Virus record (IMG/VR): IMGVR_UViG_3300032242_002041
Location: 1 to 64,000 of that record
Strand: one strand, 5' to 3'
Length of the DNA: 64,000 nt
Part shown: one piece after another, positions 1,703 through 58,200 of the stretch
Layout of the letters: each line of letters begins with the position of its first letter
Numbering within the stretch: position 1 is the stretch's first letter
Notes under the pieces: model-generated
Told to the model about the DNA's origin: nothing
What the model saw: the letters and a program-made list of their open reading frames with translations, nothing else
The model's database searches: none
Made by a program: the position numbers and the translations under genes

Positions 1703-3514
1703 TTAACCTTTATAATTTTTCCAAGTCTTGAACAAGCTACGCTCAAGCTCAACTGACTCTTCCATACTGGCCTGGCGACGTAACTGGCTAGCAACTACAG
1801 GAACGGTTGTTTGACCTGTTGACTTAGGACCATTTAGGCCGCCGCTGTATGTGCGTAGGTTAGGTTCTGCCTCAAGTGTTTCTTTATCTGTAGGCCAATC
1901 TGGATTGTTCAACGTTTCATCTGTGTCGCCGTAGGCTTCTTCAACTGTTTCATCGCAACTGCATGGTGTATTACCACATCCGCAAGATTCAGCGGACTGA
2001 CCGTGTAGACCTGCCATTTTTAACAGGGCGGCCAACTGATCAGCTTCTTCGCCTTCGGCACTAACAGTAATACTCTTACGAGTTTCACCATCTTCACCAG
2101 CGTTCATGTTTACACTGACGTTCATAGTTTCTGTAATCATTGATTCAACACGATTATTAAAACCTTCGTATACACCTTTACCAAACTGCATACCTTTGCC
2201 GGCTTTAGGTGCGGCATTGGCCACAGGTGCTACACTACCGGCTACTGTTGTTTCGTCAACTTTTTCTTCTTTGTCTTTAGAGGCTTTTTTCATAGGTTCT
2301 TTACGATCACCATCTTTATCTAAATCTAAAAAGTCTGGCTTGCCACCTTCCTTAACTTTCTTAGGTAAGCCTTTTTCTTTAGTAGCGGCAAAGTCGTGTG
2401 TGTCACCAGGTTTCATTGACTTGGCAACTTTTTTCAACTCTGGACTTGCGCCTTTGATTTTTTCACCTTTTTGGATAGCGTGTGCCATGCCCATAAACTT
2501 GCGTTGAGCTTTGCTTACGGCTTTTTCTGGAATAACTGTTGTAATCCCTTCTTCACCTGTGTGTTGTTCAACATCACGCTCGTGTGTGCTCAAGATATAA
2601 TCAGTAACACTACTCATCATACCTTTGATCTGTCCAATTTTTTCCTGTACCCACTCTGGCAGGTTCTCATTGCTACGCAAGGCACGCTCGAGTTCTTTTG
2701 CACTACGAACAATAGTATGCAAACTATCTTTGGCCATACCTGTTTCGTCATTATACTCACCTTGCTCGCCAGGATTAACATCCTCACTGCTCATGTTACT
2801 AGGGCGTGTCATCATAACTCCATCGCTATCAAGAGCTTCTTTAGTTTTGGTTTTGCGTTCGCCTTTGTGCTTCCAAGCACCTTTGGTTGTACGCTCTGGA
2901 CCTTTATCCTTGCCTTTTGGACGTCCTTTTTTCTTAGGAGCATCACTCTTAACTTCGTCATCTTTATCTTCTTCATCGTCGTGCTTGCGGGTATATGTTG
3001 TAGCTTTCATTCCGCCTGGCAAGGTGCGTTCTTTTTTATCAAATTTACCTGTGCCTTTTTCTTTTTCACGACTGGCCAACCAAGCATCCATGTCAGCAAA
3101 ACCTTCTTCAATGCTACTTGTATCTGTAAATTCTTTTCCACCTACTTTGAACTTGCCGCCCTTTGGTGTCTTTGCTAGTGCGCCAGTAAATGCATTACCT
3201 TCGTCAGTCATGCCAGTGCTTTCTTTAGGATGACGTAACTTATTCAATACCGCACCGGCAACACGCTCACCAGCCTCTTTACTGCCATAACGTTCGGCAG
3301 CACCTTTGGCAATCTTGCTAAAGTTCTTGCCAGGCTTGCCTAAATCTTTACCAGCACGGCCGGCCTTGGCACTGTAACCTGCTTCGGCTACTTCCAACGA
3401 TTCAGCTAATCTACTTTTAGGTGCAACAGCTTTTGCTTGTTCTGCAATATGTTGAGCATCTTGTTTATCAGCCAATGCGGCCAATCTCTTGTTTAGGTCA
3501 TGGAAAAATGTCAT
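1703..3514 (-). CDS. Large charged internal head protein, probable prohead-protease substrate
   Basis: 603 aa, low complexity and K/E-rich, with many hydrophobic-x-E sites, an AT-hook-like KKKGRPKGK and a DLDKDGD motif. Confidence 0.65.
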   Translation of the reverse strand: MTFFHDLNKRLAALADKQDAQHIAEQAKAVAPKSRLAESLEVAEAGYSAKAGRAGKDLGKPGKNFSKIAKGAAERYGSKEAGERVAGAVLNKLRHPKESTGMTDEGNAFTGALAKTPKGGKFKVGGKEFTDTSSIEEGFADMDAWLASREKEKGTGKFDKKERTLPGGMKATTYTRKHDDEEDKDDEVKSDAPKKKGRPKGKDKGPERTTKGAWKHKGERKTKTKEALDSDGVMMTRPSNMSSEDVNPGEQGEYNDETGMAKDSLHTIVRSAKELERALRSNENLPEWVQEKIGQIKGMMSSVTDYILSTHERDVEQHTGEEGITTVIPEKAVSKAQRKFMGMAHAIQKGEKIKGASPELKKVAKSMKPGDTHDFAATKEKGLPKKVKEGGKPDFLDLDKDGDRKEPMKKASKDKEEKVDETTVAGSVAPVANAAPKAGKGMQFGKGVYEGFNNRVESMITETMNVSVNMNAGEDGETRKSITVSAEGEEADQLAALLKMAGLHGQSAESCGCGNTPCSCDETVEEAYGDTDETLNNPDWPTDKETLEAEPNLRTYSGGLNGPKSTGQTTVPVVASQLRRQASMEESVELERSLFKTWKNYKG

Positions 3515-40481: not shown

Positions 40482-41444
40482 TTAGGATGTGTAATTCTGA
40501 ACCTGTGCCAAGGTAAGATCACCTGTGGTGTTGGTCCAAGTTGGGATGTCTGCGCCAGATTTAGCAGTGGTTGAAACAGCTTCACTGAATGTTAATCCAC
40601 GTGTGTTACCAGCAGCAGTCACAATGTTTGCACCACCTTCGGTAGCAGCCAACTGGAAAGTTGTTGTACCGTTGGTACCAATAACAAAATATGTTGTTGG
40701 GTTGGTGTAACCGGTGATTGTGGCATTGCCTGTAAGTGCGCCGGCTACAGTGATAACTTGACCTGTTGTAAAGGTTGTGGCATTGGCAGTGAACCAACCA
40801 GCAGTGTTAGCAACAGCCACACTACCAAGAGTGATTGCGGTTGTTTCGCCAGAAACAAAGAAGTTAACAGCGTAACGATTTGGAGGTGTTGATGAATCCC
40901 AAATGTACTTGTTGGTCAAACGACTAGCAAAAGTTTGGCCACCGTTGGCACTGAATACCATGTTCATTTGACCAGACGTGATTGTGGCGTTTGCAACCAA
41001 TTGGCATTGACCACAGTCACTGGCAGTGCCTGAACCTGCACCAGCACCGGTTGCTGTGAAAACGTCACCAACTGTTGGGTTGATTCCAGCACCAATTGAG
41101 GTCCAGTTTGTGTTGCCCAAGCTGAGAATTTGATAGCTAAAGCCCGGAGTGAAACTTCCTGCGTTTACACTATTTTCACCAGATACTAGATATTTGTAAG
41201 TGCCTTTTTGTGTAATAATGTGAGCAGCACCTTGTTGGCCGTTTACGTTGGCAGTGATTTTGACCACTGGAAAAGTGCTTGTAGCAATGCCTGTATTGGC
41301 ACCACCAACCACGCCCAAGAATTCAGTGCTGGTCATTCCAACCGGAATAACTTGCGTACCTGGATCCAAGTTGGCAAACTGTGGATAACCAGCATCTGTT
41401 GGAATGCTGTTGTTTAATTTTTGTATTTTAAGTGGACGACCCAT
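40482..41444 (-). CDS. Putative abundant virion structural/decoration protein
   Basis: 320 aa, beta-rich, MGRPLKI start. Has a strong AAGGAG RBS, a late promoter and its own terminator. Confidence 0.6.
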   Translation of the reverse strand: MGRPLKIQKLNNSIPTDAGYPQFANLDPGTQVIPVGMTSTEFLGVVGGANTGIATSTFPVVKITANVNGQQGAAHIITQKGTYKYLVSGENSVNAGSFTPGFSYQILSLGNTNWTSIGAGINPTVGDVFTATGAGAGSGTASDCGQCQLVANATITSGQMNMVFSANGGQTFASRLTNKYIWDSSTPPNRYAVNFFVSGETTAITLGSVAVANTAGWFTANATTFTTGQVITVAGALTGNATITGYTNPTTYFVIGTNGTTTFQLAATEGGANIVTAAGNTRGLTFSEAVSTTAKSGADIPTWTNTTGDLTLAQVQNYTS

Positions 41445-41545
41445 GATTTGTTTTCTCCTTAAAGAAGTCCGATGTGGGTTCTAGCCACTACGCGGTAGGG
41501 TTTATTCTTCCGCATAAAACGCAGGATTGCGTTGACTAGTATTTA
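41445..41545 (-). promoter_or_regulatory. Late promoter plus cloverleaf-like 5' leader
   Basis: TAAATA at 41540-41545 and three hairpins closed by AGTC/GACT. Confidence 0.6.
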
Positions 41546-51772: not shown

Positions 51773-53971
51773 TTATCTAGCAGAGTTTTGCGCTTGCTTT
51801 TTGCTGTTATCATCAATGTTGGCTAATCGACGATCCATAGATTGTAGCGCACTGTTTAACGTACCTAAAATTTCTTCACTGTGATCTGTGCGACTAGCTT
51901 CTTGATTGGCTTTTGCTACTTCTTTTTCAGGTAAAGTGGCATTAGGTTTTATTGCGGCTAGCTTGTTGTCAAAACTGTTCTTGGGGCCTGCCAATAATTC
52001 TGATCGAGCATCCTGTGCGGTTGTTTTGGCTTGACCAGCCAATAATTCTGATCGAGCATCCTGTGCGGTTGTTTTGGCTTGACCAGCCAACAACTCTGCA
52101 TTGGCCATTCTGGCACCTGTTTCGGTGCCAGCCGACCGTTCGTATAATCTATCTACTAGTTGAGCAGCCTGGGCCGCTGTTTTAGCTTGACGTAATTGAT
52201 CGCCGGCTCGTTTTTCAGTATTTTTAAGTTCATAGTCAACAAACTTTAGTTGCTCTTCGAGCGTAGAGTCTTTTAATGTTTTGCCCATGACTCGTTCAAA
52301 ATTGGCCTGGCGATCTGGGTGCCACTGTGCAACTCCCTTGGCTTTGCCACCATCGCCCACAGCATTGATGTTTAAATTCTTTCCAGATTCTTGTTGTAGG
52401 TTCCCTACAATTCCAGCGGCTTGTTCTTTGGTCCAGCCGGCACTTTGAAAGAATTTCATTGCGGTGTCGGCATTTTGACTTGAGCCAGCCCCTTGCCCGC
52501 CAAACGTTTTAGCAGGGCCGCCACCTATGCCCTGGGTGGATGCTATATTTCCTGGTGCTACTCCAGCAATTTTGTTGGTTACTTTGGATAATGCTTCCAA
52601 TGATGTAGTAGCTGGGTTTACACCCATTGTAACAAAACTTTGTAGAGAATCTCTACTCTTCATCTGGTTAATACGCAGTTCAACCTGTGCTTTGGTGTTA
52701 GGATCTAGGCCTTTTTGTTGTAGCTCTTGTTGAGCCTTGGCCAAATCCTCTTGTTGTTTCATACTAACGTCGGTATTACGAGATAAGATTCGACTACGTG
52801 TTTCAGCATCGTAGACTGCGTCGTCCATTGCTCCGTTAAACTTGTACATGCTGGCCATGCCAGATTCGTCAAATTGTTTCATGCCGGCTGTTAGTTTATC
52901 CATTCCAGCGGCTGCTTTAAAGTTTTTATCTTGTGTGTACAGTGCAAATTCACTCATTCCCATGGTCATCATCTTGCCACTTGCACTAACATCTCCGCCA
53001 ATACTTCTCCAATAATCTTTTTGTAGTGCTGGAGAAGTTTTTAGCATATCAGACATTTTGATATATTCGTCGGCTAAATCTAGTGATGCTTGGTCTCCCT
53101 TTTTCCTTAGCTCGTAAATGGTTTGATTAAACGCATTTTCAGCCATGGCTTGATTTCTATTTTCTTGAAGGGCCTCTGCACTTTCGCCTGTGAGCTTGCT
53201 CATTAAATCTAACTGCTTGATATACTCAGCACTTCTGGCAGCTAGATTTTGTTGTATGTTTGTTGATGTTACTCCAGACATTTGCTGTTGTTTAACAAAC
53301 ATAGCTATACCACGATTTATATCATCGGGTGTTTTGCCCAACATCTGTAATGATTTACCTACATCACTACGTTGTATCTGTGAGGCTGCATCGGCAAATG
53401 CTCTGGTTCCGCTAGCAGCAGTGCCACCAAAAGATGCCAGTGCCGCACTGTTCTCTTTGATTATTGCAGTCATTTGGTCTAGTTGTTCAAAACCATAACC
53501 TAACTTCTGCATGTTGGCAGTAATTTCTGTCATGCCACCAGCAGCGGCTGCACCTGATTTACTTAAATCTTGATAGGCTTTAAATACCGCATCACTCTGC
53601 TTGTTTACTGTTTTAAGTCCTTCGGCAAATACGCCCACAACTTTGCTGGCTGCAAACAAGCCTGCTTTAAGCAAAGCAGATCCGGGAATAATAAGAAGAA
53701 GAGCTTCTAGTCCACCAGCAAGCGAATCTATGGCGCCGTTCATTGCCGACATGCCTTGCTCGCCCTTATACATGGCCTTGGTAAAGTCTACAACTCCTTT
53801 GCCCATTTTTGACTGGGCGTCGGCCATTGCTTTAGAGTAGCCTTTGAGACCTTTTTCGGCATCTTTCATGGCATTAGCCATTTCCTGAGTTATAGGAGTG
53901 CCAGATTTGATTGCGTTATTATACGCTTCAAATATGCCTTGGATTTCTTCCGGGGTGTATTGATCAGCCAT
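51773..53971 (-). CDS. Tape-measure/hub protein with C-terminal phage tail lysozyme domain; start revised to 53971
   Basis: Long Ala-rich helical region, then FFQSAGWTKEQAAGIVGNLQQES...GVAQW...LEEQLKFVDYEL...YER. Confidence 0.8.
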   Translation of the reverse strand: MADQYTPEEIQGIFEAYNNAIKSGTPITQEMANAMKDAEKGLKGYSKAMADAQSKMGKGVVDFTKAMYKGEQGMSAMNGAIDSLAGGLEALLLIIPGSALLKAGLFAASKVVGVFAEGLKTVNKQSDAVFKAYQDLSKSGAAAAGGMTEITANMQKLGYGFEQLDQMTAIIKENSAALASFGGTAASGTRAFADAASQIQRSDVGKSLQMLGKTPDDINRGIAMFVKQQQMSGVTSTNIQQNLAARSAEYIKQLDLMSKLTGESAEALQENRNQAMAENAFNQTIYELRKKGDQASLDLADEYIKMSDMLKTSPALQKDYWRSIGGDVSASGKMMTMGMSEFALYTQDKNFKAAAGMDKLTAGMKQFDESGMASMYKFNGAMDDAVYDAETRSRILSRNTDVSMKQQEDLAKAQQELQQKGLDPNTKAQVELRINQMKSRDSLQSFVTMGVNPATTSLEALSKVTNKIAGVAPGNIASTQGIGGGPAKTFGGQGAGSSQNADTAMKFFQSAGWTKEQAAGIVGNLQQESGKNLNINAVGDGGKAKGVAQWHPDRQANFERVMGKTLKDSTLEEQLKFVDYELKNTEKRAGDQLRQAKTAAQAAQLVDRLYERSAGTETGARMANAELLAGQAKTTAQDARSELLAGQAKTTAQDARSELLAGPKNSFDNKLAAIKPNATLPEKEVAKANQEASRTDHSEEILGTLNSALQSMDRRLANIDDNSKKQAQNSAR
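51990..52090. repeat. Exact 48-bp tandem duplication (GQAKTTAQDARSELLA x2)
   Basis: 51990-52037 is identical to 52038-52085. Confidence 0.9.
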
Positions 53972-53997
53972 AATTATATTTACCGAGGTAAGAAAAC

Positions 53998-54837
53998 ATG
54001 AATCTAAACAATCCACTTAAACAGTATTTTAGACAACCGGCAATCTACGTCCGACTGCCCAGTCAGGGTCAAAGTTACCCTGCAGGTGCTCTAACCATGC
54101 CACCAACAGGCGAATTACCAGTGTATCCAATGACTGCCATTGACGAAATTACCTATCGTACACCAGATGCGTTATACAATGGACAAGCCACAGTCAACGT
54201 AATACAAAGCTGTATTCCTGATATCAAAGATGCTTGGGCAGTTCCTTCTACCGACACCGATACCCTGTTAATAGCTATACGCATAGCCACCTACGGGCAT
54301 GATATGGATTTTGGCACTGTTTGTCCATCCTGTAGAAAAGAGTCAGAACAAACATTGGATTTGCGTAATGTCTTGGATTCTATGCGTCCAGCTGATTATA
54401 GTAAAACTGTACAGGCTGGCGATATGGAAATATTTTTCAAACCATTGAATTACAAGAATATCAATGACAACAACGCAATACAGTATGAAAATCAAAAACT
54501 CTTACAGATGTTGCCCGATACTGCTGTACCCGACGCTGAAAAAATGACAGCCTTGACTGCTGCTTTAAAAAGAATTACCGATATTACAGTAAGTGCAATT
54601 GGACAAAGTATTTCTGCAATAAAAACTCCACAGGCTTTGGTCAACGAGCCTGCTTTCATTGAAGAATTCTTAACAAATTGTGATCGAAAACTGTTTAATC
54701 AAATTCGTGATTTTATTATCAATCTCAAGGTTAATTCAGAAATGCAACCACTTAAGATAACATGCCCTGATTGTAATCACACATACGAACAAAGTATTAC
54801 ATTGGACATGTCCAGTTTTTTCGGGTCCGCCTCTTAG
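53998..54837 (+). CDS. Baseplate hub / tail assembly chaperone (gp26/gp51-like)
   Basis: LPSQG..YP, PMTAIDE, DTLLIAIRIATYG, two CxxC motifs and a C-terminal SFF. Confidence 0.8.
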   Translation: MNLNNPLKQYFRQPAIYVRLPSQGQSYPAGALTMPPTGELPVYPMTAIDEITYRTPDALYNGQATVNVIQSCIPDIKDAWAVPSTDTDTLLIAIRIATYGHDMDFGTVCPSCRKESEQTLDLRNVLDSMRPADYSKTVQAGDMEIFFKPLNYKNINDNNAIQYENQKLLQMLPDTAVPDAEKMTALTAALKRITDITVSAIGQSISAIKTPQALVNEPAFIEEFLTNCDRKLFNQIRDFIINLKVNSEMQPLKITCPDCNHTYEQSITLDMSSFFGSAS

Positions 54838-55558: not shown

Positions 55559-55989
55559 CTTATCAGTTTGCTAGAATACGATTAGCAGAAACTACCTACC
55601 AGGCCACAGTAGAATGGGAATATCTGCATGAGCCTAACATTGTACAGCTCAAAGACATTTACAGAACCTACTGCATCTATAAACACTTTGCTAGTGTTAT
55701 GCCATTATTTGATAGTCAGTTTACAGATCCTGATACAGATGTTGTTGGTTACAGAGAAGAAGGGCAACTAGTAGCGTTTAGTTTGATGAAACGCTACGAT
55801 GAGCAAAACGTTCTAGCCAGTCAGTTTGCATGGACCTATCATAATCCACGAACAAGACTAGGCATAGAAAGTTTAAAAACAGAGTGTGCTATCTATAGAG
55901 AACGCGGATTTAAGTTCTTGTACTTAGATCAAGCACATCTGTACAAGCAAGGCTTAGAAGGCTTTGAAATTTTAGGGACACTACAATAA
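55555..55989 (+). CDS. GNAT-fold protein resembling the arginyl-tRNA-protein transferase C-terminal domain
   Basis: YREEGQLVAFS...RLGIESLKTEC..YRERGFKFLYL...YK..L.GFE follows the ATE/Bpt C-terminal pattern. Confidence 0.6.
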   Translation: MTYQFARIRLAETTYQATVEWEYLHEPNIVQLKDIYRTYCIYKHFASVMPLFDSQFTDPDTDVVGYREEGQLVAFSLMKRYDEQNVLASQFAWTYHNPRTRLGIESLKTECAIYRERGFKFLYLDQAHLYKQGLEGFEILGTLQ

Positions 55990-56324
55990 TGGCAGATTTA
56001 TACACAATTTGGGCAAACAAAGAAGGCGACATCTCAGACCTAGACTGGACCAACGGAATGCGTAGCTTTTTTGATCACTTAGTTGCAGAAGGCAAAATGG
56101 AATCATACAGAATTACTCGTTGTAAAATGGGCTTCCGCAGTATTGCTGATATGCCTGAATGGATGATTTTAATGGAATTTAAAAATATGGCTCAAATGGA
56201 TGAGGCCTTTAAGAGAGTTGCTCCATTAGAAGGCGAACTCGAAGTGAAACATAAATCATTTAATCAGTTTGTTAGTGGAGACATTCAACATGCACTGTTT
56301 AGAGATTGGCCTGATCAATTCTAA
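55989..56324 (+). CDS. Small ferredoxin-like/dimeric alpha-beta barrel protein
   Basis: L.AEGK.ESYRITR.K.GF...PEW.I.MEF..MAQMD.AF pattern. Confidence 0.55.
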   Translation: MADLYTIWANKEGDISDLDWTNGMRSFFDHLVAEGKMESYRITRCKMGFRSIADMPEWMILMEFKNMAQMDEAFKRVAPLEGELEVKHKSFNQFVSGDIQHALFRDWPDQF

Positions 56325-56742
56325 ACGAACTTATATGAGATCTCTTAGAGATCTATGTCTTTCGTTACACTCAGACATGATTGTTTTTCTTTAGCATTAT
56401 CTAGATTACGCGGTCACAATTCACCGTATGCACGGTGAACTGACTTCTACATTATCTGAGTGTAGCTGTCATTTATCATAATGAGATTGTCTTACGACGC
56501 GGAGGCGGTTGACCGGTACCCCCTACTCAAGCTTCACATATCAACGGAACCCTAGTGACCCGACGATAAATCCAAGTCCTACGAGCATGGGTCGTATCTT
56601 TTTCAACGGAGCCCAAACCATTTGTTGCCTTAAGTTAGCAATTGCCTTTCACACGCAAGCCATTCTGGACCGGGTATTGCACCGTTCCTCCTTGCGAGTC
56701 GAGCATCCTCGACCAAACAGAGTGTGTTGTTGCCTGTCTAGT
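56325..56742 (-). ncRNA. Candidate large structured non-coding RNA downstream of the GIY-YIG gene
   Basis: About 10 nested or adjacent stems, a GNRA (GUAA) loop and several G-U pairs that work on the minus strand only. No credible ORF. Confidence 0.6.
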
Positions 56743-57171
56743 TTAAATTTTGTTTTTTATGTGACTTCCATGTATACGGCACACAATTTGTCCGTTATAA
56801 TAGTCGTCTGATTCTAATACTCTATGATTAAATTGTTCTCTGGCTTCAATATAACTACATTCTGCTTTTGATTTACAATAAAATAATATTTCTCTTGTAA
56901 AGTTGTCGGCGCCCTGCGCTAGAATATCTTGGTTGAGTTGATCGTTGCTTCCATAGTATAGTTGCCAGTCTGAGTCTATTTTGCTTTTTATTTTCTTACG
57001 TTTTTTGTTGCCGTTTTTTAATTTTACTACCTTGTATGAGGTTTTACTAAATTTTGCTAATTTTTTTCCAATATATTTTCTGCCAGTTATGTTATTTGTA
57101 ATCAAATAAACAAAGCCGACACAGTCTTCGGGTAGTGTTTCAATTTGTGTGTTTTCGTAAAGCCATACCAT
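56743..57171 (-). CDS. Minimal GIY-YIG nuclease
   Basis: GFVYLITN...KYIGKK, YYGS, FTREIL and YIEAREQF...YYNG motifs, plus a Lys-rich insertion. Confidence 0.85.
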   Translation of the reverse strand: MVWLYENTQIETLPEDCVGFVYLITNNITGRKYIGKKLAKFSKTSYKVVKLKNGNKKRKKIKSKIDSDWQLYYGSNDQLNQDILAQGADNFTREILFYCKSKAECSYIEAREQFNHRVLESDDYYNGQIVCRIHGSHIKNKI

Positions 57172-57189
57172 GGACTTATAGTTATCATA

Positions 57190-58200
57190 TCACCACTCGG
57201 TTGCATATTTTTCATCCACTTTCGTATCAGAACACTTGGTTTGACATTCTTGCCAACGAAATGTTTTTAATTCTGCTGTCCAAAACGGATCAGCTATTAC
57301 ATCTAATAAGGTTCTAGTATGTAGATCAAACTGTTCAGCCAGAGTTTGCCACTCACTGTTGTGCCCGTATCGGTTGGCTACCCAGCAACAAGGAAACAAT
57401 CTACCACGAGCGTCTATGTACAAGCCCTTGTTACCAATTTCACACAAAGGTTTAACGCCGTTGATCTCAGTCGCCGACTTGTACAATTGTATATTTTTTT
57501 CGTTTACACGATTGTTAATGCCACGTGAGCTTAACAGTATAACATCTCTTTCAAATCTATGCGACCCGCTGACAAACTTACGACTAGGTTCCAACGGATC
57601 ATCAATGCCGTAACTGGGATAAACACTGCCAAATTTGGTAGAACGTGTAAGTTGAAATGCATCCATGCCCAGTTTCGTTGCTAAAGATTTCATATAGTCA
57701 ACGTGATCTTCGTTGAACTTAAAGGCTATAGCGGCCCACACCAATCGACACTTGCTTACGGCTCTTAGAGTTTCAATTCCCAGCACGATTGATACAAAAT
57801 CACTGTTTACACGATATAGATTATTACTGGCGTTATCGTAACCGTCTACGCTAAAATGCACTGTGTCTTGATCTGTTAACACAGAGCCTAGCCCTTGCCA
57901 CCATTCAGGCTTCTTGTGTGAACCATTGGTAACAATAACTATCTGCACAGGTTTAATGCGTTTGATATACTCAATTACAGGAATAAGATCGTGTGCATAT
58001 ATAGGGTCGCCATCATCGCCACAGAATGTAATTTTCTCAACATTTTTTAATATAAAATCTTCTGTAAAGTTACGTTTAAAGAACGCTAAATCTAATTCAG
58101 TATTAACTAACCCATTGGGAACTTCCTGCCGGGCGCACCGAGGGCACCGTAAGGTACACTTACTGCTGATCTCAATATGGAAGTGCCAAGTTGCTAACAT
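57190..58200 (-). CDS. Radical SAM enzyme with C-terminal SPASM/twitch domain
   Basis: CTLRCPRC, FCGDDGDP, TNGS, FSVDG and C-terminal C...PCCW...CQTKC. Confidence 0.92.
   Translation of the reverse strand: MLATWHFHIEISSKCTLRCPRCARQEVPNGLVNTELDLAFFKRNFTEDFILKNVEKITFCGDDGDPIYAHDLIPVIEYIKRIKPVQIVIVTNGSHKKPEWWQGLGSVLTDQDTVHFSVDGYDNASNNLYRVNSDFVSIVLGIETLRAVSKCRLVWAAIAFKFNEDHVDYMKSLATKLGMDAFQLTRSTKFGSVYPSYGIDDPLEPSRKFVSGSHRFERDVILLSSRGINNRVNEKNIQLYKSATEINGVKPLCEIGNKGLYIDARGRLFPCCWVANRYGHNSEWQTLAEQFDLHTRTLLDVIADPFWTAELKTFRWQECQTKCSDTKVDEKYATEW

What the first reader, a model, noticed from the sequence alone, without database searches (positions are those of the whole stretch)
56325..57171. Large structured ncRNA co-transcribed with a minimal GIY-YIG nuclease: candidate novel ribonucleoprotein system
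Seen: the ~420 nt after the GIY-YIG stop is non-coding in an otherwise gene-dense genome and is almost fully paired on the minus strand. Stems include GUCGAG-gaug-CUCGAC; CGCAAG/CUUGCG enclosing GGA/UCC and GGU/ACC; UUGC/GCAA; UGGG/CCCA; ACUUGG/UCGGGU (3 G-U pairs); GGGGG/CCUCC enclosing CGG-ucaa-CCG; GUC-guaa-GAC (GNRA); CUACA/UGUAG; GUUCACCGU-gcau-ACGGUGAAU; AUGUCU/AGACAU; and AGAUCUC/GAGAUCU. The motifs UCCGUUGA and AGAUAAUG each occur twice. UACACUCAGA and UCUGAGUGUA are complementary over 10 nt, suggesting a pseudoknot or switch. I saw no terminator or promoter between the ORF and this RNA. The protein is only a catalytic domain plus a Lys-rich insertion, and lacks the DNA-binding modules of the two homing endonucleases in this window. 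Known: some nucleases take their specificity from an adjacent structured RNA (HEARO/omega-RNA with IscB or TnpB). Inference: the RNA may be a scaffold, guide or substrate for this nuclease. Alternatively the locus is a hairpin-rich replication or packaging site at a convergence of transcription.
Basis: partly seen in the sequence, partly recalled or inferred. Interest (0 to 1): 0.88.

Follow-up and report, generated by a model that had tools for sequence, protein, structure and literature searches.

The report
Long phage RNA with twin loops
The stretch after the small nuclease gene is a real, about 405-base folded non-coding RNA, a divergent relative of the orphan "Polynucleobacter-1" RNA motif described in 2010, and nothing yet shows that it works together with the nuclease.

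Summary
Window 56336-56742 (minus strand) is non-coding, G+C-rich and encodes a structured RNA. In 77 distinct relatives, 102 proposed pairs are 87% canonical against 35-41% for slid controls, and 51 pairs show two-sided compensatory changes against 12-21.

It is not a wholly new kind. Sister phage RNAs at the same position share its 3' half, and their 5' part is Rfam RF01718 (Polynucleobacter-1, 91-105 bits). Weinberg et al. 2010 noted that this motif lies downstream of a gene family like P-SSM2 PSSM2_218. That family is this GIY-YIG protein (36% identity).

The window's own 5' half matches neither RF01718 nor my model-based test.

New here:
- The RNA is about three times longer than the Rfam model.
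- It has at least four 5' variants.
- A pseudoknot covaries across the types.
- Two hairpin loops 55 nt apart carry the same 7-mer in 128 of 129 RNAs, across more than 10 variants.

The nuclease-RNA order is kept throughout this freshwater myovirus group. But the protein family occurs in 294 cultured-phage records, and none of the three inspected has the RNA. A Polynucleobacter genomic island carries the RNA without the nuclease.

Best reading: a trans-acting, bivalent non-coding RNA. A nuclease-RNA particle remains possible at about 0.2.

The parts
56336..56742 (-). The whole structured non-coding RNA (type A), about 405 nt, from just after the GIY-YIG stop codon to the end of the terminal hairpin.
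   Evidence: An nhmmer profile of 77 relatives spans 56331-56738. Conservation runs at 80-100% per column with no 3-base periodicity. Covariation is shown.
56743..57171 (-). 142-aa GIY-YIG (SegE-type) single-domain protein, a member of PHROG 447 and a homologue of cyanophage P-SSM2 PSSM2_218.
   Evidence: Pfam PF19835, E 5e-32. PHROG 447, E 2e-36. BLASTP to PSSM2_218: 36% identity, E 3e-17. The GFVY, YIGKK, RE, E and YYN motifs are conserved in 122 homologues.
56549..56742 (-). 5' domain (q1-194), type-specific. It holds a variable hairpin (56697-56714), a long-range stem CGCAAG/CUUGCG (56691-56696 with 56654-56659) enclosing a GGA/UCC and CGG/CCG hairpin (56667-56688), a pseudoknot CAC/GUG (56722-56724 with 56650-56652), hairpin UUGC/GCAA (56625-56641), hairpin UGGG/CCCA (56588-56615) and a long hairpin (56549-56586).
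   Evidence: Compensatory pairs: 48:88, 50:86, 55:76, 57:74, 59:72, 19:93 (GC/CG), 102:118, 105:115, 128:155, 130:153, 135:150. There is no RF01718 hit.
56508..56545 (-). Pseudoknot: GUUGAU (56540-56545) pairs with UCAAC in the loop of the GGGGG/CCUCC hairpin (56501-56523).
   Evidence: The pairing is invariant within type A. It changes in step between types: A GUUGA/UCAAC, B GUUGU/ACAAC, C GUUUU/GAAAC.
56482..56529 (-). Long-range stem UGAG/CUCA (56526-56529 with 56482-56485), closing the pseudoknot hairpin and the small GUC-guaa-GAC hairpin (56489-56498).
   Evidence: Pair 214:261 is AU in 39, UA in 35 and GC in 1 of type A, and GC in 28 of the A+B set. All three pairs of 245-247:252-254 covary.
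56441..56471 (-). Twin-loop hairpin 1: stems UGAC/GUCA and CUACA/UGUAG, with the 9-nt loop CUCAGAUAA at 56452-56460.
   Evidence: A hairpin forms in all 64 distinct sequences; mean energy is -7.2 against -4.0 kcal/mol for shuffles. The loop 7-mer is identical to that of loop 2 in 128 of 129 RNAs.
56419..56440 (-). Central 9-bp hairpin GUUCACCGU/ACGGUGAAU between the twin loops.
   Evidence: 98% of cells are paired; 310:317 is GC/CG and 306:321 is CG/UA/AU across types.
56394..56418 (-). Twin-loop element 2: UGACC, then the loop UCUAGAUAA at 56397-56405, 55 nt after loop 1.
   Evidence: Identity covariation 286/341, 290/345 and 292/347. In types B and C it sits in a clear hairpin.
56355..56378 (-). 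Hairpin AUGUCU/AGACAU with the conserved internal motif UGAG..CGAA.
   Evidence: 7 of 8 pairs have two-sided changes. The motif GAGCGAnAGCGAA is shared by types A, B, C and D.
56338..56354 (-). Terminal hairpin AGAUCUC-uaa-GAGAUCU. It is the likely 3' end of the RNA and a two-way terminator between the convergent genes.
   Evidence: A hairpin of at least 5 pairs forms in 96% of 67 distinct sequences; mean energy is -7.9 against -1.3 kcal/mol for shuffles. It is flagged as terminator-like on the plus strand.
55989..56324 (+). Convergent DUF6614 gene that ends right at the RNA's 3' end. It is a conserved neighbour, not part of the RNA.
   Evidence: Pfam PF20319. Synteny holds in most loci. It is unrelated to the DUF6641 gene beside the bacterial RNA.

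Best explanation
SHOWN.
- Window 56336-56742 (minus strand) encodes a real multi-domain structured RNA of about 405 nt.
- It belongs to a family of long RNAs (about 400-550 nt) found in a large group of freshwater myoviruses and in a Polynucleobacter genomic island.
- The branches share a 3' domain: a pseudoknotted hairpin, two hairpin loops 55 nt apart flanking a long hairpin, a UGAG..CGAA hairpin and a terminal hairpin.
- The branches differ in the 5' domain. In branches B and C the 5' domain is the Rfam motif Polynucleobacter-1. In the window (branch A) it is a different or unrecognisably diverged module.

INFERRED.
- In the phage the RNA has no promoter of its own. It is made as the tail of the transcript of whatever gene lies upstream (usually the GIY-YIG gene). 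It ends at the terminal hairpin and is probably trimmed to a stable RNA.
- It acts in trans as a bivalent platform. Each loop has a fixed 5' part (CUC in loop 1, UCU in loop 2). Each also has a fast-changing 6-7-nt 3' part that is always the same in both loops.
- The RNA therefore probably binds two copies of one partner: a dimeric protein, or a short nucleic-acid sequence present twice.
- A Polynucleobacter mobile element carries a related RNA as a separate intergenic unit. The phage copy may therefore compete with, or stand in for, that RNA during infection, by sequestering or recruiting the same kind of partner.
- The GIY-YIG gene is a conserved neighbour in this phage lineage, not a demonstrated partner.
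For: - Covariation and pair statistics.
- G-U pairs fix the strand.
- The 3' half is homologous between types A and B: nhmmer E values 1e-10 to 1e-22.
- RF01718 matches in type B (105 and 91 bits) and in the bacterial type C (90 bits).
- The conserved blocks follow the same order in B and C.
- The pseudoknot covaries across types.
- Twin loops: the 7-mer is identical in 128 of 129 distinct RNAs over more than 10 variants; the bacterial type again has one shared 7-mer, AGCGAAA.
- On the GIY-gene tree the loop state changes at least 21 times. In 8 of 8 independent supported pairs both loops change together, sign test p about 0.008.
- The neighbouring bases CUC and UCU stay different in all RNAs, which argues against simple gene conversion.
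- No promoter lies before the RNA, whatever the upstream gene.
- The RNA occurs without GIY-YIG in the bacterium. GIY-YIG occurs without the RNA in the three cultured phages inspected, out of 294 records that carry the family.
Against: - No transcript data are available, so the RNA's ends and abundance are unknown.
- No partner was found. No complementary 7-mer lies at a consistent place within 3 kb, and the loop motif is not enriched in the window.
- GIY-YIG and the RNA stay together in every phage locus with enough flank, across types A, B and D, in an otherwise very variable region. A pure 'mere neighbour' model does not predict this.
- Homology of the phage 3' domain with the bacterial one rests on block order and shared motifs, not on a significant score.
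- The competition-with-host-RNA step is pure inference.
Confidence: 0.45

Rival explanations
1. Ribonucleoprotein with the GIY-YIG protein. The single-domain nuclease, which has no DNA-binding module, uses the RNA as a scaffold, specificity element or substrate. The twin loops would supply the sequence recognition.
For: - The order GIY-YIG, then 0-2 ORFs, then RNA, is kept in all phage loci with enough flank, over GIY identities from 95% down to about 66% and through replacement of the RNA's 5' domain.
- The protein is a bare catalytic domain with its catalytic motifs conserved.
- The twin loops are short, fast-changing and kept identical, as specificity elements would be.
Against: - The protein family (PHROG 447) has this length everywhere. 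It is present in 294 cultured-phage records, and the three inspected (Melnitz, phiN3, ACG-2014d) have downstream gaps of only 28-148 nt and no such RNA.
- The bacterial RNA has no GIY-YIG gene nearby.
- One or two unrelated ORFs are often inserted between the two.
- Loop variants switch about 31 times on the GIY-gene tree, so they do not track the protein.
- No RNA-guided GIY-YIG enzyme turned up in a literature search.
Confidence: 0.2
2. Cis-acting 3' untranslated element. A compact structured tail would stabilise the upstream operon's mRNA against 3' exonucleases. It would also terminate the two convergent transcripts, with no function in trans.
For: - The RNA always abuts the stop codon of the upstream gene and has no promoter of its own.
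- It sits at a point of convergent transcription in the window.
- It ends in a conserved hairpin that scans as a terminator on the plus strand.
Against: - About 400 nt, roughly 100 conserved pairs, two pseudoknots and long invariant single-stranded stretches are far more than stabilisation or termination needs.
- In some phages a co-directional gene follows the RNA.
- In the bacterium the RNA lies in its own 700-nt intergenic gap, downstream of a divergently oriented gene.
- The twin-loop concerted change has no role in this model.
Confidence: 0.15
3. DNA-level element: a replication origin, packaging site or pair of protein-binding direct repeats. The two 12-nt repeats 55 bp apart would be binding sites on double-stranded DNA.
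For: - Two direct repeats lie about five helical turns apart and change in concert, as operator or iteron sites co-evolving with a binding protein would.
- The locus lies between convergent genes.
Against: - Base-pair covariation with strand-specific G-U pairs shows selection on a minus-strand RNA fold.
- Both repeats are presented in hairpin loops whose stems covary.
- Conservation covers about 400 nt, not just the repeats.
Confidence: 0.05
4. Homing-type relationship. The GIY-YIG gene would be a free-standing homing endonuclease parked beside a conserved RNA gene that serves as its cleavage target in rival genomes. My recollection of T4 SegB in the tRNA cluster is the model.
For: - The protein has a Seg-type catalytic domain and weak matches to homing-endonuclease profiles.
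- A highly conserved RNA gene would make a good homing target.
Against: - The gene is fixed, not sporadic, in this group.
- It lacks any DNA-binding domain.
- Inserted ORFs separate it from the RNA by up to 1.85 kb.
- The family is conserved in many cyanophages with no such RNA beside it in those inspected.
Confidence: 0.05

Closest known systems
Polynucleobacter-1 RNA motif (Rfam RF01718; Weinberg et al. 2010, PMC2864571)
   Same: - Sister RNAs at the same position (type B) and the bacterial type C match it at 90-105 bits.
- They share the 3' domain with the window's RNA: significantly for type B, and by block order and shared motifs only for type C.
- The motif was described as lying downstream of genes like P-SSM2 PSSM2_218, which is this GIY-YIG family.
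- It comes from the same fresh-water setting.
- The 2010 alignment already had a partial 'tail' with a pseudoknot.
   Different: - The window's own sequence gives no RF01718 match even at E up to 10.
- A model of its 5' domain finds nothing in types B and C.
- The Rfam model covers 141 nt, while the RNA is about 405 nt here and about 550 nt in the bacterium.
- The twin loops are not mentioned in the 2010 text and files I read. That text also does not call the upstream gene a GIY-YIG nuclease, and it reported no copy in any sequenced purified phage.
OMEGA systems: IscB or TnpB with omega-RNA (HEARO RNA)
   Same: A large structured RNA is encoded next to a compact nuclease gene.
   Different: - The nuclease fold differs: GIY-YIG, not RuvC/HNH.
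- There is no HEARO match.
- There is no variable guide at an RNA end.
- There are no transposon ends.
- The RNA family and the protein family each occur without the other.
Large orphan bacterial and phage RNAs (GOLLD, ROOL, OLE, raiA)
   Same: They are of similar size and complexity, are linked to phages or mobile elements, and have many conserved unpaired bases and an unknown function. This comparison rests on my own knowledge and on the abstract of 10.1101/2024.12.08.627333 listed.
   Different: No match to any of these Rfam families. The RNA here is smaller. Whether it forms multimers was not tested.
Protein-sponge RNAs with repeated identical hairpin loops (CsrB/RsmZ type)
   Same: The same short sequence is shown in more than one hairpin loop, and many variants read GGAU.
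   Different: There are only two loops. The window's loops read AGAU and the bacterial ones AGCGAAA, so the GGA that (from memory) CsrA needs is absent in many members.
IS110 bridge RNA (two loops that each specify a DNA partner)
   Same: One structured RNA has two separate short specificity loops, and in the bacterium it lies beside a recombinase gene.
   Different: - Here the loops are apical rather than internal, and they carry the same sequence rather than two different ones.
- The neighbouring enzymes are a GIY-YIG nuclease or a tyrosine recombinase, not a DEDD/serine recombinase.
- No target was found.
- The features of the bridge RNA are recalled from memory.
T4 Seg free-standing GIY-YIG endonucleases (SegB beside the tRNA genes)
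   Same: A Seg-type catalytic domain encoded next to an RNA gene.
   Different: It has no DNA-binding domain and is fixed rather than sporadic. It belongs to a separate family of about 145 aa, PHROG 447.

Membership tests
Rfam RF01718 Polynucleobacter-1 RNA | Match to the family's covariance model at or above the gathering score (37 bits). | tested here: not met
   The window gives no match at gathering or at E up to 10 on 56200-57300. Type A loci L059 and L156 also give none. Sister type B scores 105 and 91 bits, and bacterial type C scores 90 bits.
Rfam RF01718 Polynucleobacter-1 RNA | Position downstream of a gene of the GOS11034 / PSSM2_218 family, as stated in the 2010 supplement. | tested here: met
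   The RNA starts right after the stop codon of the 142-aa protein, which is 36% identical to PSSM2_218 (E 3e-17). The 2010 text is quoted.
Rfam RF01718 Polynucleobacter-1 RNA | Homology of the 5' domain: hairpin with a GGC-rich loop, second hairpin, then GGAnGGAA followed by a hairpin with a GCAGUA-like loop. | tested here: inconclusive
   By eye the same order of elements is present. However, a covariance model of the type A 5' domain finds nothing in types B and C, with or without filters.
Rfam RF01718 Polynucleobacter-1 RNA | Shared 3' 'tail' with a pseudoknot. | tested here: met
   The type A profile matches the 3' 200 nt of type B at E 1e-10 to 1e-22. The pseudoknot covaries across types A, B and C. 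The 'tail' and 'tailpknot' subfamilies are named in the 2010 alignment.
RNA-guided nuclease systems (OMEGA: IscB/TnpB plus omega-RNA) | A nuclease of the RuvC (with or without HNH) fold that carries an RNA-binding region. | tested here: not met
   The protein is a GIY-YIG domain only.
RNA-guided nuclease systems (OMEGA: IscB/TnpB plus omega-RNA) | A structured RNA with a variable guide segment at one end, and obligate co-occurrence with the nuclease. | tested here: not met
   There is no hypervariable terminal segment. The only fast-changing parts are the 7-nt twin loops. The RNA and protein families each occur alone.
GIY-YIG homing endonucleases (Seg / I-TevI type) | A GIY-YIG catalytic domain with its conserved Tyr, Tyr, Arg, Glu and Asn residues. 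| tested here: met
   PF19835, E 5e-32. GFVY, YIGKK, RE, E109 and YYN are conserved in 122 homologues.
GIY-YIG homing endonucleases (Seg / I-TevI type) | A separate DNA-binding domain, and a sporadic (mobile) distribution. | tested here: not met
   The domain fills the 142 aa, and the family profile has 148 positions. The gene is present at this position in nearly all related contigs.
Group I intron carrying a GIY-YIG ORF | A group I ribozyme core, with flanking exons that restore a host gene. | tested here: not met
   There is no Intron_gpI match at E up to 10. The RNA's 3' end abuts the stop codon of a convergent gene, so there is no downstream exon. The upstream genes vary.
Type III toxin-antitoxin RNA (ToxI-like) | Tandem direct repeats upstream of an endoribonuclease toxin gene. 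| tested here: not met
   There are only two 12-nt repeats, 55 nt apart, inside a 400-nt fold. The gene order is reversed, and the protein is of the DNA-nuclease type.

The most novel reading that the evidence does not exclude
The twin loops may be programmable specificity elements. The RNA would hold a bare catalytic enzyme encoded nearby: the GIY-YIG nuclease in the phages, or the FimB/E-sized tyrosine recombinase in the Polynucleobacter island. Its two identical 6-7-nt loop sequences would direct that enzyme to a pair of identical short nucleic-acid sites. That would be a new kind of RNA-guided DNA enzyme, unrelated to CRISPR, OMEGA or bridge RNAs.
Probability: 0.06. Interest if true: 0.92.

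Novelty: new variant of a known kind. Interest (0 to 1): 0.5.

Why it matters
Large, highly structured RNAs of unknown function are rare, and each has been a source of new biology. This one is common. A related RNA sits in Polynucleobacter, which I recall as a dominant freshwater bacterial genus.

The work turns a 141-nt orphan motif into a family of RNAs of about 400-550 nt with interchangeable 5' domains, a conserved pseudoknotted core and two loops that change together. That last feature gives a concrete handle for experiments. Whatever recognises the loops must be present in two copies and must change quickly between closely related phages.

The work also corrects a widespread mis-annotation. 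The upstream gene, often called 'NAD synthetase', is a GIY-YIG nuclease domain.

If the nuclease or the bacterial recombinase turned out to use the RNA for targeting, it would be a new RNA-guided system. That is unlikely on present evidence.

Tried and rejected
- DECAYED GENE REMNANT. I considered a decayed C-terminal DNA-binding domain of a homing endonuclease. Rejected: stops in all frames, a G+C jump rather than the gene's low G+C, and base-pair covariation.
- GROUP I INTRON. No Rfam match and no downstream exon.
- OTHER KNOWN RNAs. tRNA, tmRNA, RNase P, 6S, HEARO, GOLLD and ROOL gave no ARAGORN or Rfam match.
- PHAGE DATABASE. blastn against cultured phages gave no match.
- WASTED SCAN. 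The genome-contig scan used a degenerate pattern from the pseudoknot hairpin. It returned chance matches in high-G+C genomes, none of which fits the RNA profile.
Not conserved.
- RNAALIFOLD LONG-RANGE PAIRS. The pairs 104-119 with 198-212 and 215-218 with 282-285 never vary. Covariation contradicts them in favour of the local UUGC/GCAA hairpin and the 214:261 stem.
- SELF-COMPLEMENTARY LOOP 2. AUCUAGAU could act as a kissing-dimer site, but the palindrome is lost in variants such as GCAUAAU and ACAUGAA and in the bacterial type.
- CsrA-TYPE GGA LOOPS AND BOX C/D K-TURNS. The critical G residues are missing in the window's own loops.
- COMPLEMENT OF THE LOOP 7-MER. None at a consistent place within 3 kb, and no enrichment in the window.
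- DUF6614 VERSUS DUF6641. The phage neighbour and the bacterial neighbour are unrelated.
- THE 188-AA BACTERIAL RECOMBINASE. I first read it as 'missing its DNA-binding domain'. It is the normal size for FimB/E-type invertases.
- EARLIER COUNTS CORRECTED. 'RNA without GIY' (L156) and 'GIY without RNA' (L336, L338, L360) were both wrong.
- HAIRPIN H1 (56716-56738). It folds no better than shuffled sequence.
Full report
WHAT IS IN THE WINDOW

The 142-aa ORF at 56743-57171 (minus strand) is a single GIY-YIG domain of the SegE type: Pfam PF19835, E 5e-32, covering residues 3-129. It is followed by about 420 nt with stop codons in all three frames. Then comes the stop codon of a convergent DUF6614 gene, 55989-56324 on the plus strand.

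- G+C rises to 0.48-0.52 inside the gap, against 0.32-0.40 around it.
- No tRNA or tmRNA was found.
- No Rfam family matches at the gathering score, nor at E up to 10 on 56200-57300.
- No promoter-like or terminator-like site lies between the ORF and the gap. The only terminator-like hairpin is at 56338-56354.
- The window is the structural region of a myovirus, with tail sheath, major head protein, portal and baseplate hub.

IS THE FOLD REAL?

Folding energy alone does not show it: z is -1.66 on the minus strand and -1.59 on the plus strand. Related sequences do.

They confirmed 541 and 599 relatives respectively.
- The window is contig IMGVR_UViG_3300032242_002041, 228 kb (L081).
- The gap is conserved at 79-92% nucleotide identity in most loci. 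There is no three-base periodicity, and long stretches are invariant.
- Across 77 distinct sequences (alignment A2), many stems keep pairing through changes on both sides. Examples: 48:88 CG/GC/GU/AU; 128:155 UA/GC/AU/CG; 130:153 GC/AU; 220:242 GC/AU; 369:384 CG/AU/GC/UA.
- For a hand-curated set of 102 pairs, 87.4% of cells are canonical, against 35-41% when the 3' partners are slid by 1-3 columns. 51 pairs show two-sided changes, against 12-21 in the slid controls.
- Three hairpins vary too much in length to align. Each still forms in essentially every one of 47-67 distinct sequences, with energies far below shuffles.
- Invariant G-U pairs show that the RNA strand is the minus strand.
- Three details are not. 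The 10-nt 'switch' is complete in 2 of 77 relatives. UCCGUUGA is doubled in only 16 of 77. The CGG-ucaa-CCG loop more likely forms a pseudoknot.

ANATOMY

Mutual-information analysis added three long-range contacts.

- 19:93 is GC or CG, giving a 3-bp pseudoknot between the first loop and the strand after the CGCAAG/CUUGCG stem.
- 214:261 is AU, UA or GC.
- GUUGAU (q198-203) pairs with UCAAC in the loop of the GGGGG/CCUCC hairpin.

The third contact never varies within the window's type. It changes in step between types: GUUGA/UCAAC, GUUGU/ACAAC and GUUUU/GAAAC.

The most unusual feature is a pair of elements 55 nt apart, one on each side of the 9-bp GUUCACCGU hairpin. Each presents a 9-nt loop.

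- Loop 1 is CUC plus RGAUNA. Loop 2 is UCU plus RGAUNA.
- The first three bases are constant and differ between the two loops.
- The following 7-mer varies between phages (GGAUAAU, GGAUGAU, AGAUAAU, GGAUGAA, GCAUAAU, GGAUGAG, AGAUCAA, ACAUGAA and others). It is the same in both loops in 128 of 129 distinct RNAs.
- On a tree of the neighbouring GIY-YIG gene, the A/G position changes at least 21 times. In 8 of 8 phylogenetically independent, well-supported pairs the second loop changed the same way, p about 0.008.
- The adjacent constant bases stay different, so simple gene conversion is an unlikely cause. Selection for one shared recognition sequence is the better reading.
- A search for this signature found it in 196 of 240 viral loci and in 0 of 120 shuffled loci.

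RELATION TO WHAT IS KNOWN

The related phage loci fall into types. Type A (the window) matches the whole sequence profile. Type B matches only the 3' 200 nt, at E 1e-10 to 1e-22, and has a different 5' half of about 240 nt.

That 5' half is Rfam RF01718, the Polynucleobacter-1 RNA. It scores 105 bits in L296 and 91 bits in L129, against a gathering score of 37.

The supplement of Weinberg et al. 2010 (PMC2864571) makes four points:
- Most examples lie downstream of genes of family GOS11034, with possible homology to PSSM2_218 of cyanophage P-SSM2.
- The 3' half is not always detected.
- No copy was found in any sequenced purified phage.
- One copy is in Polynucleobacter sp. QLW-P1DMWA-1.

Their alignment already carries 'tail' and 'tailpknot' subfamilies.

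PSSM2_218 is a 145-aa protein that is 36% identical to the window's GIY-YIG protein, E 3e-17.

The window's own 5' domain is a different matter. RF01718 does not match it. A covariance model built from 41 type A 5' domains finds nothing in types B or C, even with filters off. By eye the order of elements is similar: a hairpin with a GGCAA loop, a second hairpin, then GGAGGAA followed by a hairpin with a GCAAUA-type loop. That is a lead, not a test.

A fourth phage type (D; L336, L338, L360) was missed by the sequence profile. It has the twin loops ACUCACAUGAA and AUCUACAUGAA, the central hairpin and the GAGCGAUAGCGAA hairpin.

THE BACTERIAL RELATIVE

- A 26-nt pattern from the Polynucleobacter copy matched at least 120 freshwater metagenome contigs and no viral contig.
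- These type C RNAs are about 550 nt. They start with RF01718 (90 bits in L485). They have the same order of conserved blocks as type B.
- They again carry two loops with one shared 7-mer, CUC-AGCGAAA and UCU-AGCGAAA.
- Sequence profiles of types A and B do not reach them. The link therefore rests on RF01718, block order and shared motifs.
- In Polynucleobacter sp. 86C-FISCH the RNA lies in a 700-nt gap between a divergent DUF6641 gene and a small ORF.
- After that come a 188-aa tyrosine recombinase of FimB/E size, two unknown genes, an RFC-like AAA ATPase, a 424-aa integrase-like protein and a 1579-aa helicase-like protein. Ordinary housekeeping genes lie on the other side.
- This looks like an integrated mobile element. 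There is no GIY-YIG gene. No defence-system profile matched convincingly.

IS THE NUCLEASE THE RNA'S PARTNER?

For:
- In every phage locus with enough flanking sequence, the order is GIY-YIG, then none, one or two inserted ORFs, then the RNA.
- My first counts of exceptions were wrong. The L156-type contig has the GIY-YIG gene 1.85 kb upstream, behind two inserted ORFs. The loci that seemed to lack the RNA have the type D form.
- Only loci with short flanks remain undecided.
- The association survives replacement of the RNA's 5' domain, in a region that otherwise swaps radical-SAM genes and other cassettes freely.

Against:
- The protein is a full-length member of PHROG 447, whose profile has 148 positions.
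- That family is present in 294 cultured-phage records, including cyanomyoviruses, Methylophilales phage Melnitz, Sinorhizobium phiM12-like phages and Acidovorax ACP17. It is often mislabelled 'NAD synthetase'.
- In the three records inspected, the downstream gaps are 28-148 nt and hold no such RNA. The family therefore does not need the RNA.
- The bacterial RNA does without the nuclease.
- Loop variants switch about 31 times on the GIY-gene tree.
- No RNA-guided GIY-YIG enzyme turned up in a literature search.

I put a direct functional partnership at about 0.2.

MOST LIKELY MECHANISM

Shown: a compact, multi-domain RNA with two pseudoknots and two loops that display the same short sequence. 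It has no promoter of its own in the phage. Its 5' end abuts the stop codon of whichever gene lies upstream. It ends in a conserved hairpin.

Inferred: it is transcribed as the tail of the upstream operon and trimmed to a stable RNA. It works in trans by binding two copies of one partner through the twin loops. The partner could be a dimeric protein, or a short nucleic-acid sequence present twice.

The rapid, concerted turnover of the loop sequence suggests that the partner itself changes fast, as in a conflict between phage, host and mobile elements. A host mobile element carries a related RNA. The phage copy may therefore compete with or replace that RNA during infection. That last step is speculation.

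I found no partner. There is no complementary site within 3 kb and no enrichment of the motif in the window.

VERDICT

- The RNA is a new variant of a known but uncharacterised kind. It fails the RF01718 membership test itself. It clearly belongs, though, to the same extended family as RNAs that pass.
- The new points are the full length, the modular 5' domains, the cross-type pseudoknot, the twin loops, the phage origin and the identity of the upstream gene.
- Interest is moderate (0.5). It would be high if the loops proved to be programmable specificity elements.

Noticed in passing
window 41445-41534 (-): A freshwater-2 RNA (Rfam RF02980, 64.6 bits against a gathering score of 49.9) lies immediately 5' of the 320-aa ORF at 40482-41444 (-). 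It is a second orphan RNA motif in the same phage window.
   Followed up: no
window 57190-58200 (-), and loci L002-L160 upstream of the GIY-YIG gene: The region upstream of the GIY-YIG gene is a cassette hot spot. Different radical-SAM/SPASM paralogues (24-83% identity to the window's) occupy it. ORFs of 261, 336-342 and 407 aa with no Pfam match, or with a radical-SAM match, are inserted before or after the RNA in different contigs.
   Followed up: partly
window 56743-57171 (-); L362, L363, L364 (cultured phages): Homologues of this GIY-YIG domain protein (PHROG 447; T4-like gene cluster 213 in P-SSM2) are annotated 'NAD synthetase' in many RefSeq phage records. The Pfam match and the conserved motifs say it is a GIY-YIG nuclease domain.
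   Followed up: yes
L485 6186-16567 (Polynucleobacter sp. 86C-FISCH, JACVOL010000001.1, about 897.5-908 kb): The bacterial copy of the RNA sits at the edge of what looks like an integrated element. Its genes are DUF6641, the RNA, a FimB/E-sized tyrosine recombinase, an RFC-like AAA ATPase, a 424-aa integrase-like protein and a 1579-aa DUF4011/AAA_11/AAA_12/MTES_1575/DUF3320 helicase-like protein. Housekeeping genes lie on the other side. No tRNA gene lies at the boundary.
   Followed up: partly
L485 3270-3373 (-): A glycine riboswitch (RF00504, 59 bits) lies in the Polynucleobacter flank. It is unrelated to the finding.
   Followed up: no
loci L101, L103 (DUF6614 at 3001-3333): In a few contigs DUF6614 is followed by co-directional ORFs, and neither the RNA nor the GIY-YIG gene lies within 3 kb. 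This is a different gene arrangement, or a different phage lineage carrying DUF6614.
   Followed up: no
window 51773-54016 (-): The 747-aa ORF next to the baseplate-hub gene is Ala/Gln-rich. It contains a short direct repeat, (T)TAQDARSELLAG(Q/P), near its C-terminus (translation). It looks like a tape-measure or tail-lysin type protein. I did not examine it.
   Followed up: no
tblastn with the GIY-YIG protein finds no paralogue in the window. I did not otherwise look for them.
   Followed up: partly
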